Assembly (NCBI RefSeq): GCF_036588685.1
Contig: NC_086386.1
Location: 61,070,001-61,134,000, forward strand
Direction of reading: 5' to 3'
DNA: 64,000 nt
Source of the DNA: Mytilus trossulus
Taxonomy: Eukaryota
In this document: positions 5,047-22,168 of the stretch, one piece after another
How the letters are laid out: each line of letters starts with the position of its first letter
Numbering within the stretch: position 1 is the first letter of the stretch
Notes under the pieces: model-generated
Database searches by the model: none
Seen by the model: only the letters and a program-made list of their open reading frames with translations
What the model was told of the DNA's origin: nothing
Position numbers and translations under genes: made by a program

Positions 5047-5082
5047 GACATGTAGCTGACGACCGCTAGTTTGCCACACAAC

Positions 5083-5120
5083 GGCCCTTTTAAGGGCCAA
5101 CCATATTTTTCAAAAAGAAT
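5083..5120 (+). terminator. Histone mRNA 3' stem-loop plus purine-rich downstream element
   Basis: GGCCCTTTTAAGGGCC (5083-5098) is the canonical 16-nt histone stem-loop, preceded by CACAAC and followed by AACCA. AAAAAGAA at ~5112-5119 is HDE-like. Confidence 0.9.
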
Positions 5121-5191
5121 TTAGATTTTGTTACATCAGTTCGTATAACCTAATAATTACAAGTTAAAAACAACGCCTAAAAAGAAAAAAG

Positions 5192-14556: not shown

Positions 14557-15458
14557 GAAACTTTATCACTTATATATCGACATACTGGTATCGTATCTAC
14601 AAAGAATATCACTGCAATAAAATATGTATACATTTACATTGTCTTTTAATGACTTAAACCTAGCCGATTTTAGAATGCATTTCCATCATGTATACCAAAA
14701 TTGGATTGCCCGGGTTAGACTATATACTTGGGTGATACCAACACTTTGACGTTTGAATTAGGTTTTAGATTTTCAATTATTTTTGCCTCTCCGATCTCAG
14801 AAGTAACATTTGTTTAATTGTGCATCTGGTGTAGAAACATGTTATTAATTGCAAGTTCGAAGATATTTTATTGTATTTGGAGACTTTAGACTATCGAATC
14901 GAAAATGATGCTAGCCAATCCAGATGCTATACAGGTATCTAAGTACTAACTCAACTGAACGAAAACACTTCTTAAACATACATTTCGAAATCAGTCAATC
15001 ATACTGTGGCTTTCTTTAATATATTTTTTTTTTCATTCGCAATATATGACAAACAAGAACAACAAAAAACATTTTTTAGACCGTATAGTAAGGTATAAAC
15101 CCCAAAATAACAATAAACCGACGAAGAAGGAACATAAAAGCTCATTAGTCGAAGATAAATTGATCCGTCATGTCAAAAAAAAGAAGAAAAAAACGACGAA
15201 AAGACTACATTCAGAAAAAGACAGCTTCAAAGAGCTAGCAACACTAACACCTTCAATAGCGGGGGTAATATAAGGTGTGTCGAAAGGGTAAGCAAATCCT
15301 GCTCCTCATTTTGGGAATCGTCGTCACGGTTCCTTGTGTAAGCACAGAATTCTACGATAAGTCTCTTTTTGAGTTGTCAATTTCGAAAGAAAAAAAAATA
15401 TAACGGGATTGACGTTACAAGAATATTTAAACATGCATATATATATATATATATATAT

Positions 15459-15797
15459 AAACGCCTAAAAAGTGTACATAACAACACCAATCACACAAAA
15501 AGGAACTATAAATGTAATTATTTATAAATATTTCGGATAACAGATATCCTTCGTCAGTCAAATTCTGATTTTAACATCAGAATTTGACTGACGAAAGAAT
15601 TTGACTGACGAAGGATATCTGTTATCCGAAATATTTATAAATAATTACATGTATAGTTCCTTTTTGTGTTATTGGTGTTGTTATGTACACTTTTTAGGCG
15701 TTTATATTATAATTTATTTTATTGTGTACATGTATCGTTACTTGTAACGATCCAGCGCCCTCGTGGGAAAAATCGTTGACTATTATTCAGACGTTTT
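15459..15797. mobile_element. Module C: short head-to-head (fold-back) non-coding Penelope-type element with hammerhead motifs
   Basis: 15459-~15570 is the inverted copy of ~15596-15705. A 17-bp local duplication agaatttgactgacgaa lies near the centre. Bounded by (TA)n on both sides. Confidence 0.75.
15600..15642 (+). ncRNA. Minimal hammerhead ribozyme-like motif (module C); mirrored on the minus strand at ~15520-15562
   Basis: CTGACGA-A-GGATA-tctgt-TATCC-GAAA-TATT: intact CUGANGA and GAAA cores with a 5-bp stem II. Stem I is weak. Confidence 0.65.
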
Positions 15798-15807
15798 ATA
15801 TATATAT

Positions 15808-16530
15808 ACCTGTTAGTCAAATGCGTTTTGTTTAAATATACTTTTTCACGCTTTTGGTCTTTTGGAAAATGTTGTTTGTGCTGTTTTTAGACCCTTCTAC
15901 AACGAAATTTGTTTGACATGCACACGTATAAAAATTGCGGTTTTTATCCAACGCAGTCATAGGTTTGAACGTAGTTTTCAATTTAGACTCGTTTATATTT
16001 TTTGTTTGGGCATGTAACATATTTTCCCTCCGGTTTATATGATCCGTTCATCCTATATATTGACTCTTAAAATTCAAGAGTTAATCTAAAAATGAGGGTA
16101 CTTTCTCTAAAAATTGAGGGTACTTTTTATATGGCCTTCCAAATACCGTTTCGATCCCTAACATCACTGAAGAGACATTTATTGTCGAAATCCGGATATG
16201 GTGTACTTAAGAAATATTGACACCGAATGTTTGTGGCACAACATCCTGTCCACAAGTTAACAATTTTTTTTTTTCTGTGACGTATCAATTTTATTTGGCA
16301 GTCGTCAATGGCAGTCAGCAGGGTTAAAGAACATCAGTTGTTCGACCTGTTAGTCAAATGCGTTTTGTTTAAATATACTTTTTCACGCTTTTGGTCTTTT
16401 GGAAAATGTTGTTTGTGCTGTTTTTAGACCCTTCTACAACGAAATTTGTTTGACATGCACACGTATAAAAATTGCGGTTTTTATCCAACGCAGTCATAGG
16501 TTTGAACGTAGTTTTCAATTTAGACTCGTT
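15808..16530 (+). mobile_element. Module A (left): hammerhead-bearing partial tandem (retrozyme / non-autonomous PLE), period 537 bp
   Basis: ~185-bp direct terminal repeat (15808-15992 and 16345-16530) around an internal segment containing the hammerhead. (TA)n on both sides. Confidence 0.8.
16161..16204 (+). ncRNA. Type I minimal hammerhead ribozyme (module A left)
   Basis: ACATCA-CTGAAGA-GACA-tttat-TGTC-GAAA-TCCGGA-TA-TGGTGT: stem I, core, stem II, palindromic stem III (ATCCGGAT), AUA cleavage triplet. Confidence 0.85.
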
Positions 16531-16552
16531 TATATATATATATATATATATA

Positions 16553-16620
16553 ACCATAAATTTGCGAAAGCAAATTTACAGATCTAACATTGTTGGTTTG
16601 ATGTTTAGACGAGTTGTATT
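16553..16620 (+). repeat. Module B 3' fragment
   Basis: aaatttgcgaaagcaaatttacagatctaacattgttggtttgatgtttagacgagttg is the reverse complement of 20726-20790. Flanked by (TA)n. Confidence 0.8.
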
Positions 16621-16801
16621 TATATATATATATATATAGTGTCTAAAAATAGCAACAATCAACATTCAATCTATATAGGTGTGGATCAGTTTGTAAATAA
16701 ACTGATGCAGTTACTAAATTGAATTATATAAGTGTCTAAGAATGTAACTTTAACACACTTATGAGTGTTATAAAATTAGGTGTTATATTTTATATATTAT
16801 T

Positions 16802-16842
16802 CACGCAATATTTCGCTAAACAAATTAGCTTCATCGGGCGTG
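16802..16842 (-). ncRNA. Hammerhead-like motif in PLE 3' UTR (left arm)
   Basis: Mirror image of 19251-19291. Confidence 0.6.
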
Positions 16843-17028
16843 TGCATCTATCAAGGTGAAATCGGATGCATGACAAAAAATATCTTTGTAGCTTGAGCTA
16901 CACAAAAGTTTAACATATTGATTAATGATCTGTATAAAACATTTTTTTGCCGTTTATTGTACATAAACATTTTTTTCAAAAATTTAAACAAATAGTTGTT
17001 TTAGTTAAATAGAAGTAAAATTGATGAG

Positions 17029-17961
17029 TTATTCCTTTGCTTTCGGGTAGAACTGTTTTTCATCCCTCTCATTAAGTCCATCAGGTTCAAGAGTACGTAG
17101 CTGATGCATCCAGAACCTTTCTCTCTTTTTCCTCATTTCTGAGTCCCAATTTTGGTTTACCTCAATTATTTGAAAGGTGATATTTTCAAAGGTATGTCCT
17201 GTTCTTAAGAGGTGTCTCGTAATTGGACAGTTTCTTCCTTTTGTATAAAACGACCGATGATTGTTTAGTCTGATGTTAAATGTGGTTTCTGTTTCACCAA
17301 CATATTGCAGCTTGCAAGTTCCACAAGTAAGAATATAAATACTATTTTCCGTTTTGCAATTAGATGTAACATAGATGTTGTATCGCTGCTTTGTTACTGT
17401 GCTGCTGAAAGAGTGGTCAGTGTTGGCGGCTTTACAGCACTTACAGTTCCTTCTACCGCATTGTTTGTAACACCCAAATTTTGAAGTTTCTTGTTTCTTT
17501 ACTTTTGATGTCACAAGTATGTCTTTGAGATTTTTGGGTCTGCGATAGGCAATAAGAGGAGGTGATGGAAAAATTTCTTTTAAGGACGAGTCATTTTCGA
17601 TTAGACGCCAGTGCTTTCGGATAAAAGATGAAATATTTGTCAAATCGGGATGGAATGTTACAACAAACGGAATTCTATCTGCACGGGTCGCCTTATTTTT
17701 GTATTCCATGAGGCTAGCTCGATCTTTTTCTTTAGCTTTATCAAAAGCGTCTGTGATGTTTTTGGTTTTATATCCTCTTGATTTCAGCTGTGTTTTTAGT
17801 TGTCCCAAACGATAGTTGAGTTTGGATTCAGAGGAGCAAATTCGCTTTAGTCTGATGGCTTGACTGTAAGGTATACTCCTGGAGCAGTGTTTCGGATGAA
17901 AACTTTTTGGAGAAAGGAACTGGTGTTTATCAGTTTTCTTTGTGTGGAGGTCAGTTGTCAT
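17029..17961 (-). CDS. PLE polyprotein C-terminal part: RT thumb, Cys-rich linker, GIY-YIG endonuclease (left copy)
   Basis: S.HP.H..RSIPYSQA.R..RIC thumb motif, CGRRNCKCC linker, IYILTCGTCKLQYVGET..RLNNH GIY-YIG, E.FW..L.T..P.GLN. The frame continues upstream through IKFT..FLD (RT motifs 6-7) to the palindrome centre. Confidence 0.88.
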   Translation of the reverse strand: MTTDLHTKKTDKHQFLSPKSFHPKHCSRSIPYSQAIRLKRICSSESKLNYRLGQLKTQLKSRGYKTKNITDAFDKAKEKDRASLMEYKNKATRADRIPFVVTFHPDLTNISSFIRKHWRLIENDSSLKEIFPSPPLIAYRRPKNLKDILVTSKVKKQETSKFGCYKQCGRRNCKCCKAANTDHSFSSTVTKQRYNIYVTSNCKTENSIYILTCGTCKLQYVGETETTFNIRLNNHRSFYTKGRNCPITRHLLRTGHTFENITFQIIEVNQNWDSEMRKKRERFWMHQLRTLEPDGLNERDEKQFYPKAKE

Positions 17962-18132
17962 GATCCCGTTTTTTACAAATGTGGTGGTGTCGAGAAAAGC
18001 AATTTTCTCGCTTGAAAATTCAGATGTAAATTTAATTAAATTTAATTTAAATACTCAATTAAATTTACATCTGAATTTTCAAGCGAGAAAATTGCTTTTC
18101 TCGACACCACCACATTTGTAAAAAACGGGATC

Positions 18133-19065
18133 ATGACAACTGACCTCCACACAAAGAAAACTGATAAACACCAGTTCCTTTCTCCAAAAAGTTGTCATCC
18201 GAAACACTGCTCCAGGAGTATACCTTACAGTCAAGCCATCAGACTAAAGCGAATTTACTCCTCTGAATCCAAACTCAACTATCGTTTGGGACAACTAAAA
18301 ACACAGCTGAAATCAAGAGGATATAAAACCAAAAACATCACAGACGCTTTTGATAAAGCTAAAGAAAAAGATCGAGCTAGCCTCATGGAATACAAAAATA
18401 AGGCGACCCGTGCAGATAGAATTCCGTTTGTTGTAACATTCCATCCCGATTTGACAAATATTTCATCTTCTATCCGAAAGCACTGGCGTCTAATCGAAAA
18501 TGACTCGTCCTTAAAAGAAATTTTTCCATCACCTCCTCTTATTGCCTATCGCAGACCCAAAAATCTCAAAGACATACTTGTGACATCAAAAGTAAAGAAA
18601 CAAGAAACTTCAAAATTTGGGTGTTACAAACAATGCGGTAGAAGGAACTGTAAGTGCTGTAAAGCCGCCAACACTGACCACTCTTTCAGCAGCACAGTAA
18701 CAAAGCAGCGATACAACATCTATGTTACATCTAATTGCAAAACGGAAAATAGTATTTATATTCTTACTTGTGGAACTTGCAAGCTGCAATATGTTGGTGA
18801 AACAGAAACCACATTTAACATCAGACTAAACAATCATCGGTCGTTTTATACAAAAGGAAGAAACTGTCCAATTACGAGACACCTCTTAAGAACAGGACAT
18901 ACCTTTGAAAATATCACCTTTCAAATAATTGAGGTAAACCAAAATTGGGACTCAGAAATGAGGAAAAAGAGAGAAAGGTTCTGGATGCATCAGCTACGTA
19001 CTCTTGAACCTGATGGACTTAATGAGAGGGATGAAAAACAGTTCTACCCGAAAGCAAAGGAATAA
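18133..19065 (+). CDS. PLE polyprotein C-terminal part: RT thumb, Cys-rich linker, GIY-YIG endonuclease (right copy)
   Basis: Same as the left copy except for 3 aa differences (F/C, C/Y, F/S). The RT catalytic core is absent because of 5' truncation. Confidence 0.88.
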   Translation: MTTDLHTKKTDKHQFLSPKSCHPKHCSRSIPYSQAIRLKRIYSSESKLNYRLGQLKTQLKSRGYKTKNITDAFDKAKEKDRASLMEYKNKATRADRIPFVVTFHPDLTNISSSIRKHWRLIENDSSLKEIFPSPPLIAYRRPKNLKDILVTSKVKKQETSKFGCYKQCGRRNCKCCKAANTDHSFSSTVTKQRYNIYVTSNCKTENSIYILTCGTCKLQYVGETETTFNIRLNNHRSFYTKGRNCPITRHLLRTGHTFENITFQIIEVNQNWDSEMRKKRERFWMHQLRTLEPDGLNERDEKQFYPKAKE

Positions 19066-19250
19066 CTCATCAATTTTACTTCTATTTAACTAAAACAACT
19101 ATTTGTTTAAATTTTTGAAAAAAATGTTTATGTACAATAAACGGCAAAAAAATGTTTATTCAGATCATTAATCAATATGTTAAACTTTTGTGTAGCTCAA
19201 GCTACAAAGATATTTTTTGTCATGCATCCGATTTCACCTTGATAGATGCA

Positions 19251-19291
19251 CACGCCCGATGAAGCTAATTTGTTTAGCGAAATATTGCGTG
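19251..19291 (+). ncRNA. Hammerhead-like motif in PLE 3' UTR (right arm), U4C core variant
   Basis: CACGC-CCGATGA-A-GCTAA-tttgt-TTAGC-GAAA-TATT-GCGTG: perfect 5-bp stems I and II, minimal palindromic stem III, CCGAUGA in place of CUGAUGA. Confidence 0.62.
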
Positions 19292-19746
19292 AATAATATA
19301 TAAAATATAACACCTAATTTTATAACACTCATAAGTGTGTTAAAGTTACATTCTTAGACACTTATATATATATATATATATATATATACGAGTCTAAATT
19401 GAAAACTACGTTCAAACCTATGATTGCGTTGGATAAAAACCGCAATTTTTATACGTGTGCATGTTAAACAAATTTCGTTGTAGAAGGGTCTAAAAACAGC
19501 ACAAACAACATTTTCCAAAAGACCAAAAAAGTGAAAAAGTATATTTCAACAAAACGTATTTGACTAACAGGTCGAACAACTGATGTTCTTGAACCCTGCT
19601 GACTGCCATTGGCGATTGCCAAATAAAATTGATCACAAGATGTAACAAAATGGATCTTAAAATAAATCTAATACTAAACAGAAAAACTTTTTAAACTTGT
19701 GGCCGCGATGTTATGCCACAAACATACGGTGTCAATATATCTTAGT

Positions 19747-19790
19747 ACACCAGATCCGGATTTCGACAATAAATGTCTCTTCAGTGATGA
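19747..19790 (-). ncRNA. Type I minimal hammerhead ribozyme (module A right, unit 1)
   Basis: Reverse complement reads CATCA-CTGAAGA-GACA-tttat-TGTC-GAAA-TCCGGA-TC-TGGTG (AUC triplet). Confidence 0.85.
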
Positions 19791-20316
19791 TAGGGATCGA
19801 AACGGTATTTGGAAGGCCATATTAAGAGTATCCTCATTTTAAGAAAAAGTACCCTAATTTTTAGATAAACTCTTGAATTTAAAGAGTCAATATAGGATGA
19901 ACGGATCATATAAACCGGAGGGAAAATATGATACAAAGCCCAAACAAAAAAATATAAACGAGTCTAAATTGAAAACTACGTTCAAACCTATGATAGCGTT
20001 GGATAAAAACCGCAATTTTTATACGTGTGCATGTTAAACAAATTTCGTTGTAGAAGGGTCTAAAAACAGCACAAACAACATTTTCCAAAAGACCAAAAAA
20101 GTGAAAAAGTATATTTCAACAAAACGTATTTGACTAACAGGTCGAACAACTGATGTTCTTGAACCCTGCTGACTGCCATTGGCGATTGCCAAATAAAATT
20201 GATCACAAGATGTAACAAAATGGATCTTAAAATAAATTTAATACTAAACAGAAAAACTTTTTAAACTTGTGGCCGCGATGTTATGCCACAAACATACGGT
20301 GTCAATATATTTTAGT

Positions 20317-20360
20317 ACACCAGATCCGGATTTCGACAATAAATGTCTCTTCAGTGATGT
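20317..20360 (-). ncRNA. Type I minimal hammerhead ribozyme (module A right, unit 2)
   Basis: Same motif as 19747-19790, 570 bp away. Confidence 0.85.
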
Positions 20361-20725
20361 TAGGGATCGAAACGGTATTTGGAAGGCCATATTAAGAGTA
20401 TCCTCATTTTAAGAAAAAGTACCCTAATTTTTAGATAAACTCTTGAATTTAAAGAGTCAATATAGGATGAACGGATCATATAAACCGGAGGGAAAATATG
20501 ATACAAAGCCCAAACAAAAAAATATAAACGAGTCTAAATTGAAAACTACGTTCAAACCTATGATTGCGTTGGCTAAAAACCGCAATTTTTATACGTGTGT
20601 ATGTTCAACAAATTTCGTTGTAGAATGGTCTAAAAACAGCACAAACAACATTTCCCATAAGGCCAAAAAAGTGAAAAAGTATATTTCAACAAAACGCATC
20701 TGACTAACAGGTCATATATATATAT

Positions 20726-21547
20726 AACTCGTCTAAACATCAACCCAACAATGTTAGATCTGTAAATTTGCTTTCGCAAATTTTTGGTTCTTCTCTCGCC
20801 GGGATTCGAACCCATGCTACTGTGATATCGTGACACCAAATCGCCTGCACTGCAGTCGTCCCGCTAGACCACATGACCACCTGGGCTCTAAAAAAAGAGC
20901 TTTCGCTGGCCATGTGTTACCTTTCCACGTCAGTTTTAATCTAGCGGCGTACTACAGTACATGATATATAAGGCATGAAGATGTTATTGTTACAGATCAA
21001 CTAAATTATCCATAGTAAAGGATCCTACAAATTATTGTAAGATACAGTCACAGAAAATAATTATATTCATAAGTACGTCTGAGTCAGTGACAACCCTACA
21101 ACAGATGTATCCATCGGATCGCCATTAATGATGGTTATACATGGCTGTGTACATAATGTATATACAACTCGTCTAAACATCAACCCAACAATGTTAGATC
21201 TGTAAATTTGCTTTCGCAAATTTTTTGTTCTTCCCTCGCCGGGATTCGAACCCATGCTACTGTGATATCGTGACACCAAATCGCCTGCACTGCAGCCGTC
21301 CCGCTAGACCACACGACCACCTGGGCTCTCAAAAAAAGAGCTGTCGCTGGCCATGTGTTACCTTTCCACGTCAGTTTTAATCAAGCGGCGTACTACAGTA
21401 CTTGCTATATAAGGCATGAAGATGTTATTGTTACAGATCAGCTAAATTATCTATAGTAAAGGATCCTACAAATTAATGTAAGATACAGTCACAGAAAATA
21501 ATTATATTCATAAGTACGTCTGAGTCAGTGACAACCCTACAACAGAT
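20726..21547 (-). mobile_element. Module B: 440-bp tandem (~1.9 units) with an internal tRNA-like Pol III promoter
   Basis: aactcgtctaaacatc at 20726 and 21166. Minus-strand A box (TGGTC(A/G)TGTGG) and B box (GGTTCGAATCCC) within 20791-20886 and 21231-21326. A T7 run lies just upstream of each head. (TA)n on both sides. Confidence 0.8.
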
Positions 21548-22168
21548 ATATATATATATATATGTTTGTTGTCATTTGTAATCATTTAGATGCAGCTCCC
21601 TTGTAACATTTTAATGACACTAACAATCGTATTCGGTTTCTAAAAACTTATTATGTTAAAGAATACTTCGGTTGATGATCTTTGTGCCATACAAAAAGTT
21701 GTACCAACCTCGACTTCGTCTCGGATAACATTTATATATTTAGATGCAGTCTACCAAAACACACTAAACTATCGACAAATAGTTTATTCTATGTAAAACA
21801 CAGTTTAATATAAAAATAAGGAGAATTTTGAATAACCAAATCTGAAAATGAATTAGACAAAATACATAAATCTAAAGCTGAAAACCGAAAAAGCTTGCTT
21901 AACAAGTTGGACAACTATTTCTCTAAACAGCACCAATCTTTATTAAAAGTCGGTCAATTTTGAAGCTGTGTTTACTTAAAAGTGAAACTATTGTACCTAT
22001 CAATACAATAGCATGATATATACATACAAGAGGTATACTATTTCAGTATGATATTACAAGGGACACGGTAACATATTTAAGATCAGAACATGCATAAAGT
22101 ATACACTGCTAGGACAAACATTAAACACACTCGGAAGAAACGATAGATTAATTTCTAAAGAGGACAGT

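What the first reader, a model, noticed from the sequence alone, without database searches (positions are those of the whole stretch)
15459..20740. All four module types share a 3'-terminal motif, T(T/C)AG(A/G)C-N2-5-TATA
Seen, reading each module in its sense orientation. PLE: CTTAGACACT-TATA (19353) and TTTAGACAC-TATA (minus, 16639). A: TTTAGACTCGTT-TATA (16520) and TTTAGACTCG-TATA (minus, 19388). B: TTTAGACGAGT-TATA (minus, 20726) and TTTAGACGAGTTGTATT-TATA (16604, a slightly longer spacer). C: TTTAGGCGTT-TATA (minus, 15459) and TTCAGACGTTT-TATA (15786). Internal copies of these ends are also followed by an element-encoded TATA. The modules are otherwise unalignable. Inference: this is a cis signal marking where reverse transcription starts, with the element's own UAUA pairing to the nicked (TA)n target. 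I do not know of a description of this motif.
Basis: partly seen in the sequence, partly recalled or inferred. Interest (0 to 1): 0.85.

Follow-up and report, generated by a model that had tools for sequence, protein, structure and literature searches.

The report
Start-site signal of mussel Penelope retroelements
A short word (TTAGAC or a close variant) followed by TATA marks the points where a group of Penelope-like jumping genes of the mussel Mytilus trossulus, and two families that depend on them, join (TA)n repeats; it is the core of a larger conserved RNA module and fits a start-site mechanism shown in vitro in 2024 for a lizard element.

Summary
The motif is real. All eight quoted sites are in the window. 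In the whole genome (Mytilus trossulus) 3,760 of 17,955 flanks of (TA)8+ tracts (21%) carry TTAGAC 1-7 nt before the tract, against 24 for the reversed pattern.

- Module C is not a separate non-coding module. It is the 3' end of a fourth Penelope-like element (PLE) family.
- The modules are alignable. PLE families with 45-79% protein identity to the window element's family, plus A and B, share a module of about 115 nt. Its order is site 1 (TTAGRC-N2-5-TATA), a hairpin with covarying pairs and an invariant ATCC box, a GTTG box, then site 2 (T[T/C/A]AG[A/G/T]C-N1-4-TATATA).

Both sites serve as alternative 3' ends. In 10 of 11 head-to-head PLE pairs, one arm ends at site 1 and the other at site 2. 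TATATA sites without the word are never ends (0 and 0 against 55).

This matches the published finding that a Poseidon PLE starts reverse transcription internally at two sites that delimit the "tail" (PMC11167929). New here are the sequence-defined word, the TA homology to the target, the covarying hairpin, and the sharing with two dependent families. The roles of the 6-mer and of UAUA pairing are inferred, not shown.

The parts
15437..21563 (.). Nest of retroelement insertions in one (TA)n microsatellite. TA tracts at 15437-15459, 15797-15808, 16531-16552, 16621-16638, 19363-19388, 20714-20726 and 21546-21563.
15460..15796 (.). Module C: two head-to-head, heavily 5'-truncated copies of the 3' end of PLE family 4. 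The minus arm ends at site 1 (TTAGGC 15463-15468). The plus arm carries site 1 internally (15694-15699) and ends at site 2 (TCAGAC 15787-15792).
   Evidence: module hit 15684-15802 (+), E~1e-12
15809..16530 (+). Module A, 1.35 units of 537 nt. The terminal site TTAGAC 16520-16525 is homologous to PLE site 2. The upstream word 16424-16429 (also 15887-15892) is homologous to site 1 but has no TATA. Internal junction word at 15983-15988.
   Evidence: module hits 15877-15997 and 16414-16536
16553..16620 (+). 5'-truncated 68-nt fragment of module B, ending with TTAGAC 16605-16610.
   Evidence: I12
16639..18037 (-). PLE family 1, 5'-truncated, left arm of the palindrome. ORF 17029-17961 (310 aa, GIY-YIG). 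Site 1 is internal (16734-16739); the arm ends at site 2 (16641-16646), so it includes the 93-nt tail.
   Evidence: module hit 16631-16748 (-), E~1e-12
18057..19362 (+). PLE family 1, right arm of the palindrome. The inverted-repeat arms are 100% complementary over 1101 nt. ORF 18133-19065. The arm ends at site 1 (TTAGAC 19354-19359) and has no tail.
19389..20713 (-). Module A, 2.3 units of 570 nt. Terminal word 19392-19397; internal junction words 19962-19967 and 20532-20537.
   Evidence: module hits 19383-19503, 19953-20073, 20523-20643
20727..21545 (-). Module B, 1.86 units of 441 nt. Terminal word 20731-20736, internal junction word 21171-21176. A second used site is TCAGAC (21077-21082, and by the 441-nt period about 21518-21523). 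Hairpin module at 20965-21091 and 21406-21532.

Best explanation
The word T[T/C/A]AG[A/G/T]C followed within 1-6 nt by TATA(TA) is the conserved core of the sites where the reverse transcriptase of a (TA)n-targeting group of mussel Penelope-like elements begins cDNA synthesis on nicked (TA)n DNA.

Each element RNA carries two such sites about 90-100 nt apart. They flank a conserved hairpin (G.AUC...GAU.C base with a covarying upper stem, followed by CCA) and a GUUG box. The whole 115-nt module sits at the junction between tandem units, so the start sites are internal to read-through transcripts.

Initiation at site 1 gives a copy without the 'tail'. Initiation at site 2 gives a copy with it. 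In head-to-head insertions the two DNA ends use one site each.

Two dependent families carry the same module and are copied by the same enzyme: A (tandem) and B (with a tRNA-like part).

Shown here:
- The ends, their frequencies and the negative controls.
- The homology of the module and the covariation of the hairpin.

Inferred:
- The protein binds the hairpin or the word.
- The encoded UAUA pairs with the TA 3' end of the nicked target.
For: 1. Enrichment: 21% of all (TA)8+ flanks carry TTAGAC, against 24 control hits. All recurrent termini among 362 flanks in 81 loci carry the word or a close variant.
2. Two alternative termini in every family examined. PLE1 ends at +297 and +390, about equally. 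The same holds for PLE2, PLE3, PLE4 (=C), PLE6 and B. In tandem PLE1 copies both sites are followed by encoded TATATA.
3. Natural controls. The PLE1 main site is followed by (TA)5+ at 55 places. The two TATATA sites without the word in the same 160 nt are so followed at 0 and 0 places. A's upstream word without TATA is an end at about 10 places, against roughly 900 estimated for its terminal site.
4. The shortest copies between TA tracts (13, 27 and 38 nt) keep the word.
5. The word is invariant in modules of families with 45-79% protein identity, while mean column identity is 61%. Hairpin: 6 of 9 pairs have compensatory changes; 94.9% of cells are paired, against 70.9% in shuffles (0/500) and 23-40% when slid.
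6. PLE-only models find A and B.
7. 10 of 11 head-to-head pairs have one end of each kind.
8. Precedent: internal initiation at two sites that delimit the tail in Poseidon PAc (PMC11167929).
Against: - No experiment or RNA end mapping supports it. The RNA reads laid were sparse, came from both strands and were uninformative.
- The only PLE tested in vitro initiates at sites without homology to the cleaved DNA, so TA pairing may not be needed.
- The word varies (TTAGGC, TCAGAC, TCAGTC, TATAGGC, TTTGAC). Distant (TA)n-adjacent PLEs from metagenomes lack it, so it is lineage-specific.
- The independent lineages are few, and A is clearly derived from a PLE module. Part of the sharing is therefore common descent.
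- B's similarity to the PLE-only model is marginal (E 0.02-0.07, rough calibration).
Confidence: 0.7

Rival explanations
1. Common descent only. A, B and C inherited or captured a PLE 3' module. The 6-mer is merely a slowly diverging piece, and the working determinants are the hairpin and/or TA microhomology alone.
For: C is a PLE end. A is homologous to the PLE module along about 120 nt. Other blocks (ATCC, GTTG, hairpin) are equally conserved.
Against: The word is invariant at both sites in families with only 45% protein identity, and it occurs twice per module. TATATA without the word is never an end (0 and 0 against 55). A word without TATA is still used occasionally.
Confidence: 0.15
2. 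DNA-level signal. The GIY-YIG endonuclease recognises the word or tail in DNA next to TA, so elements home to each other's ends and the word marks cleavage sites rather than RNA start sites.
For: Nests and facing 3' ends are common. The Drosophila Penelope endonuclease was reported to need the tail sequence in its DNA substrate (as summarised in PMC11167929).
Against: About 79% of (TA)8+ flanks lack TTAGAC, and the outer flanks of nests are unique DNA. Among the first 100 motif flanks, 28 face another motif flank, against about 21 expected if independent (my count), so there is little homing. Ends at site 1 are true ends, not interruptions, because no tail follows further on.
Confidence: 0.1
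3. The encoded TATA(A) and the word serve transcription (a TATA box in the pseudo-LTR driving the downstream unit) or RNA 3'-end formation, and the coincidence with insertion ends is secondary.
For: Site 1 reads TATAAT(T) in all seven PLE modules, and site 2 lies about 80 nt upstream of the PLE1 start codon. PLE promoters are known to lie in pseudo-LTRs (PMC8557442).
Against: It does not explain why truncated copies of every length end exactly there, nor why A and B keep the word at their ends. No RNA start or end was seen in the reads.
Confidence: 0.05

Closest known systems
Poseidon PAc of Anolis carolinensis: internal initiation of reverse transcription at two adjacent sites (Frangieh et al. 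2024, PMC11167929)
   Same: A PLE with tandem units. Two alternative start sites lie near the unit junction. The 'tail' is the stretch between them and is present at only one end of insertions. A stem-loop lies at the start region. Both DNA strands are used, which fits the head-to-head copies.
   Different: PAc starts in an AC-rich stem-loop 111-118 nt inside the ORF, has a 30-40 nt tail, and shows no homology to the cleaved DNA. Here the sites lie 80-170 nt upstream of the ORF and are 90-100 nt apart. Each has a defined word plus TATA that matches the (TA)n target, and they flank rather than lie in the hairpin. Nothing here is tested biochemically.
(TA)n-targeting PLE clades and the PLE 'tail' (Craig et al. 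2021, PMC8557442)
   Same: C-terminal GIY-YIG with CX4CxxC and CCHH motifs, insertion into (TA)n, pseudo-LTRs, inverted 5'-truncated copies, and a tail at one end. Non-autonomous Chlamys elements share 3' ends with autonomous ones.
   Different: That paper attributes the tail to endonuclease-mediated resolution and describes no terminal word or conserved 3' RNA structure. Clade assignment of the mussel families (Neptune or Nematis type) was not tested here by phylogeny.
SINE/LINE partners with shared 3' tails (stringent type, such as eel UnaL2/UnaSINE1; from my own knowledge)
   Same: Dependent elements carry the partner's 3' stem-loop plus a short terminal repeat needed for priming.
   Different: The enzyme here is a PLE RT with a GIY-YIG nuclease. 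There are two internal start sites, tandem copies are produced, and the terminal repeat equals the target microsatellite.
Animal non-LTR retrozymes as PLE-dependent elements (PMC7229834; bioRxiv 10.64898/2026.07.22.740005)
   Same: A is a tandem, non-coding family related to a PLE terminal region, as reported for Xenopus retrozymes and pseudo-LTRs.
   Different: No hammerhead in A was recognised by Rfam. Those papers do not define a start-site word.
EN-minus PLEs (Athena, Coprina) and telomerase
   Same: RTs of the same lineage use short RNA stretches complementary to the DNA 3' end (reverse-complement telomeric repeats at element 3' ends; Fig. 1 legend of PMC8557442).
   Different: Those act at chromosome ends without a nuclease. 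Here the complementary stretch would be UAUA and the DNA end is made by the nuclease in (TA)n.

Membership tests
Penelope-like element (EN+, C-terminal GIY-YIG) | Single ORF with a reverse transcriptase followed by a C-terminal GIY-YIG nuclease | tested here: met
   L051 ORF of 926 aa: RVT_1 E=2.3e-10 and GIY-YIG E=2.7e-6 at residues 823-906. Window ORFs: GIY-YIG E=2e-6.
Penelope-like element (EN+, C-terminal GIY-YIG) | Partial tandem copies (pseudo-LTR), frequent 5' truncation, inverted adjacent copies, and a tail at one end | tested here: met
   Three tandem units of 3,251 bp on C7. Truncated copies. 11 head-to-head pairs, 10 of them with the tail on one arm only.
Neptune/Nematis-type PLE | CX2-5CxxC linker upstream of GIY-YIG, CCHH inside it, and (TA)n target | tested here: met
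   Invariant C784, C789 and C792, plus C829, C832, H851 and H866/H872, in alignment A1. (TA)n junctions. Clade phylogeny was not done.
Canonical PLE | Hammerhead ribozyme in the pseudo-LTR | tested here: not met
   No hammerhead family in Rfam scans of 15000-22000 at E<=1 or of 16100-16260 at E<=10. Minimal PLE hammerheads may escape these models.
PLE with two internal RT start sites (as PAc) | Two alternative 3' termini that delimit the tail | tested here: met
PLE with two internal RT start sites (as PAc) | Initiation mapped biochemically inside the RNA template | not testable with these tools
   Needs an in vitro assay. RNA reads were uninformative.
tRNA-derived SINE (module B) | tRNA-derived head with pol III boxes | tested here: inconclusive
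   ARAGORN calls no tRNA. A GGTTCGAATCC-like box and a preceding T7 run are visible by eye.
Non-LTR retrozyme (module A) | Tandem repeats carrying a type I hammerhead | tested here: inconclusive
   Tandem arrays of up to more than 10 units. A CUGAAGA...GAAA core with a palindromic helix III can be read by eye at about 16165-16195, but Rfam gives no hit.

The most novel reading that the evidence does not exclude
A telomerase-like alignment step in an endonuclease-bearing PLE. The TA 3' end made by the nuclease base-pairs with an internal UAUA that is positioned by an adjacent TWAGRC anchor. One ribonucleoprotein, bound to the hairpin between two such sites, serves the two DNA ends with one site each. 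This would explain the one-sided tail and the head-to-head palindromes, and it would let any RNA carrying the 115-nt module (tRNA-like, ribozyme-like, circular or multimeric) be copied from an internal point.
Probability: 0.35. Interest if true: 0.7.

Novelty: new variant of a known kind. Interest (0 to 1): 0.5.

Why it matters
PLE retrotransposition is poorly understood, and only one element has been reconstituted in vitro. This mussel lineage offers sequence-defined start sites, a covarying hairpin, and natural 'mutants': a word without TATA, TATA without the word, and variant words.

It also offers two abundant dependent families, which by my estimate supply some 3,400 ends at long TA tracts. 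Together these give direct, cheap predictions for binding and priming assays.

The case contrasts with the reported lack of template-target homology in PAc. It suggests how PLE RTs, the sister group of telomerase RT, align a DNA end on an internal RNA site. It also improves annotation: short 'unknown' repeats next to (TA)n in bivalve genomes can be assigned to PLE partners.

Tried and rejected
- Chance is rejected.
- Rfam gives no known family for the module. The microRNA hits at 17943-18151 are artefacts of the 1.1-kb palindrome.
- No hammerhead in A was recognised, and no tRNA in B.
I used the one metagenome scan instead. Close relatives (52-85% protein identity) have the module and the word. 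Relatives at 35-43% that abut (TA)n do not. L121 has TTAGAC 12 nt from a TA tract, which may be chance.
- RNA reads from four runs (three RNA runs kept as raw reads, one run of contigs) gave low depth on both strands and none beyond site 2. (TA)n loose ends at both sites show the same two junction types in runs of two other coded organisms (one raw-read RNA run, one contig run), but say nothing about RNA ends.
- My first alignment placed an ATCC box downstream of A's terminal site. The profile search showed that the true homologous register is upstream.
- B's module register also differed from my first guess.
- A search of the scan's own findings for this motif returned only unrelated Naiad twister notes.
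Full report
**Setting.** The window is G000:C14:61070001-61134000 of a 1.30-Gb animal genome. A protein identical to the window's element family is annotated in Mytilus trossulus on a contig of exactly the length of C14, so the genome is M. trossulus. Positions 15437-21563 are one (TA)n microsatellite filled with retroelement copies, each bounded by TA tracts.

**Observation.**
- The degenerate pattern T[TC]AG[AG]C-N1-6-TATA occurs 19 times in the window, against 6.9 +/- 2.6 in shuffles. Thirteen lie in the 6.2-kb nest; the six outside are at chance level.
- The genome has 17,955 flanks of (TA)8+ tracts. Of these, 3,760 (20.9%) have TTAGAC 1-7 nt upstream, against 24 for the reversed pattern.
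- A motif-blind list of 100 such flanks has about 35 with the word: about 22 from B, 9 from A and 3-4 from PLEs. No other recurrent terminus appears.

**What the modules are.** The 310-aa ORFs at 17029-17961(-) and 18133-19065(+) carry a GIY-YIG domain. [quoted passage not shown] It also has the CX4CxxC and CCHH cysteines of (TA)n-targeting PLE clades (PMC8557442).

The genome holds at least three related families: family 1, and families 2 and 3 at 79% and 65% protein identity to it. Copies of module C lie about 0.6-0.8 kb downstream of an ORF with 42-47% identity to family 1. C is therefore the 3' end of a fourth PLE family, not an independent non-coding module. Related families 5 and 6 turned up in the same loci. 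A (units of 537-576 bp, arrays of more than 10 units) and B (441-bp units, copies 96-98% alike) are abundant non-coding families.

**Two sites per element.** Family 1 copies end at one of two places: +297 or +390 after the stop codon, each with the word directly before (TA)n.
- In tandem copies both places are internal, and each is followed by encoded TATATA.
- The same holds for family 2 (TTAGACATT / TTAGACAT), family 3 (TTAGGCAATC / TATAGGCACT), family 4 = C (TTAGGCGTT / TTCAGACGTTT), family 6 (TTAGACTTGT / TTCAGTCATTT) and B (TTAGACGAGTT / TCAGACG...). Spacing between the sites is 90-100 nt, and both sites are used as ends.
- Among 362 distinct TA flanks in 81 loci of this genome, nearly every recurrent terminus carries the word or a one-letter variant. 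The one clear exception is the far side of B's own internal TA site.

**A shared module.** Aligning the stretch from site 1 to site 2 of nine modules shows several invariant features: TTAG.C, an ATCC box, the GT of a GTTG box, AG.C and ATATA. The nine are families 1-4 and 6, two metagenome relatives, A and B; mean column identity is 61%.
- Between the sites lies a 9-bp hairpin. Six of its pairs show compensatory changes. 94.9% of cells are paired, against 70.9% in shuffles (0 of 500 reach it) and 23-40% when the partner is slid.
- A profile built from five PLE modules alone finds A at E=1.8e-8 (TA-flanked end) and 7e-4 to 0.05 (internal copies). In this alignment A's terminal word corresponds to PLE site 2, and an upstream TTTTTAGACCC corresponds to site 1.
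- A covariance model of seven PLE modules alone finds all five A copies (E 3e-4 to 0.04). It also finds both B units (E 0.02 and 0.07 window-wide; calibration is rough), with B's module beginning at its TCAGAC site.
- So the modules are alignable, and the motif is the core of a module of about 115 nt.

**Natural controls.**
- PLE1 site 1 is followed by (TA)5+ at 55 places in the genome. The two TATATA sites of the same region that lack the word are so followed at 0 and 0 places.
- A's upstream word, which has no TATA, abuts a TA tract at about 10 places. I estimate roughly 900 for A's terminal site, taking 24% of 3,760.
- The shortest copies between TA tracts are 13, 27 and 38 nt, and all keep the word.
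- In 10 of 11 head-to-head family 1 pairs, one arm ends at site 1 and the other at site 2. With equal use of the two sites, the chance of this is about 0.006. The window's palindrome and the small palindrome of C follow the same rule.

**Breadth.**
- Metagenome relatives at 52-85% protein identity have the module and the word or a variant (L084 TTCAGAC, L086 TATAGAC).
- A 44% relative has the hairpin and boxes upstream of its ORF, but CTAGAA in place of the word.
- Relatives at 35-43% have no module hit, and those abutting (TA)n lack the word.
- The signal is therefore specific to one PLE lineage.

**Known work.** (TA)n targeting, pseudo-LTRs, inverted copies and a one-sided tail are described for PLEs. 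Non-autonomous Chlamys elements share 3' ends with autonomous ones (PMC8557442). Animal retrozymes are related to PLE termini (PMC7229834; bioRxiv 10.64898/2026.07.22.740005).

Most important is Frangieh et al. 2024 (PMC11167929). They showed in vitro that Poseidon PAc starts reverse transcription internally at two adjacent sites, that the tail is the stretch between them, that both DNA strands are cleaved and extended, and that the start site has no homology to the cleaved DNA. I found no description of the word itself.

**Mechanism.** The genomic signatures fit internal initiation at two sites, as in PAc. Specific to this lineage are the defined word, the encoded TATA that matches the target, the covarying hairpin between the sites, and the sharing with two dependent families. 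Two steps are inferences: that the protein reads the word, and that UAUA pairs with the nicked TA end.

A DNA-level homing role is unlikely to be the main one. 79% of TA flanks lack TTAGAC, and facing motif pairs are only slightly more common than independence predicts (28 against about 21 per 100, my count). A promoter role for TATAAT at site 1 is possible in addition.

**Limits.**
- RNA reads were sparse and uninformative.
- Covariance-model E-values are rough.

**Verdict.** The finding is real and statistically solid. It is a new, sequence-defined variant of a mechanism published in 2024.

Noticed in passing
L001-L030 (own genome); window 16639-19362 and 15460-15796: In 10 of 11 head-to-head PLE family 1 pairs, one arm ends at site 1 and the other at site 2. 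The window's large palindrome and the small C palindrome do the same. This is the 'tail at one end only' signature, now tied to defined sites.
   Followed up: yes
coordinates (A unit positions 486-491 of 537; B unit positions 391-393 of 441): Many A and B arrays begin with a partial unit of about 50 nt, then full units. In A this start falls at the ATCC box on the 3' side of the module hairpin. This suggests a preferred stop or second junction about 50 nt upstream of the start site.
   Followed up: partly
L054, minus strand, just after the C site-1 end: An A array starts with reiterated scraps of its own terminal 8-14 nt (gactcgtt, ttagactc, aatttagactcgtt) before the first full junction, as if the start region had been copied several times.
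   Followed up: no
window 16165-16195 (+) and the equivalent places in 19389-20713 (-): A carries a hammerhead-like core (CUGAAGA, a GACA/UGUC helix II, GAAA, and a palindromic AUCCGGAU where helix III would be). Rfam models do not recognise it at E<=10.
   Followed up: partly
window 20780-20890 (-): B has a tRNA-like stretch with a GGTTCGAATCC-like box, preceded by a run of seven T. ARAGORN calls no tRNA. The stretch lies just upstream of B's dominant terminus, so the unit looks circularly permuted relative to a classical SINE.
   Followed up: partly
window 17943-18151: Strong but sub-threshold Rfam hits to plant and animal microRNA precursor families are artefacts of the perfect 1.1-kb inverted repeat of the PLE.
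   Followed up: yes
window 5078-5122 (+): Histone 3' UTR stem-loop (Rfam RF00032, 37.8 bits), so a replication-dependent histone gene lies just upstream.
   Followed up: no
window 15076-15087 (+): An isolated TTAGACCGTATA lies 360 nt left of the nest. It may be chance or an old relic.
   Followed up: no
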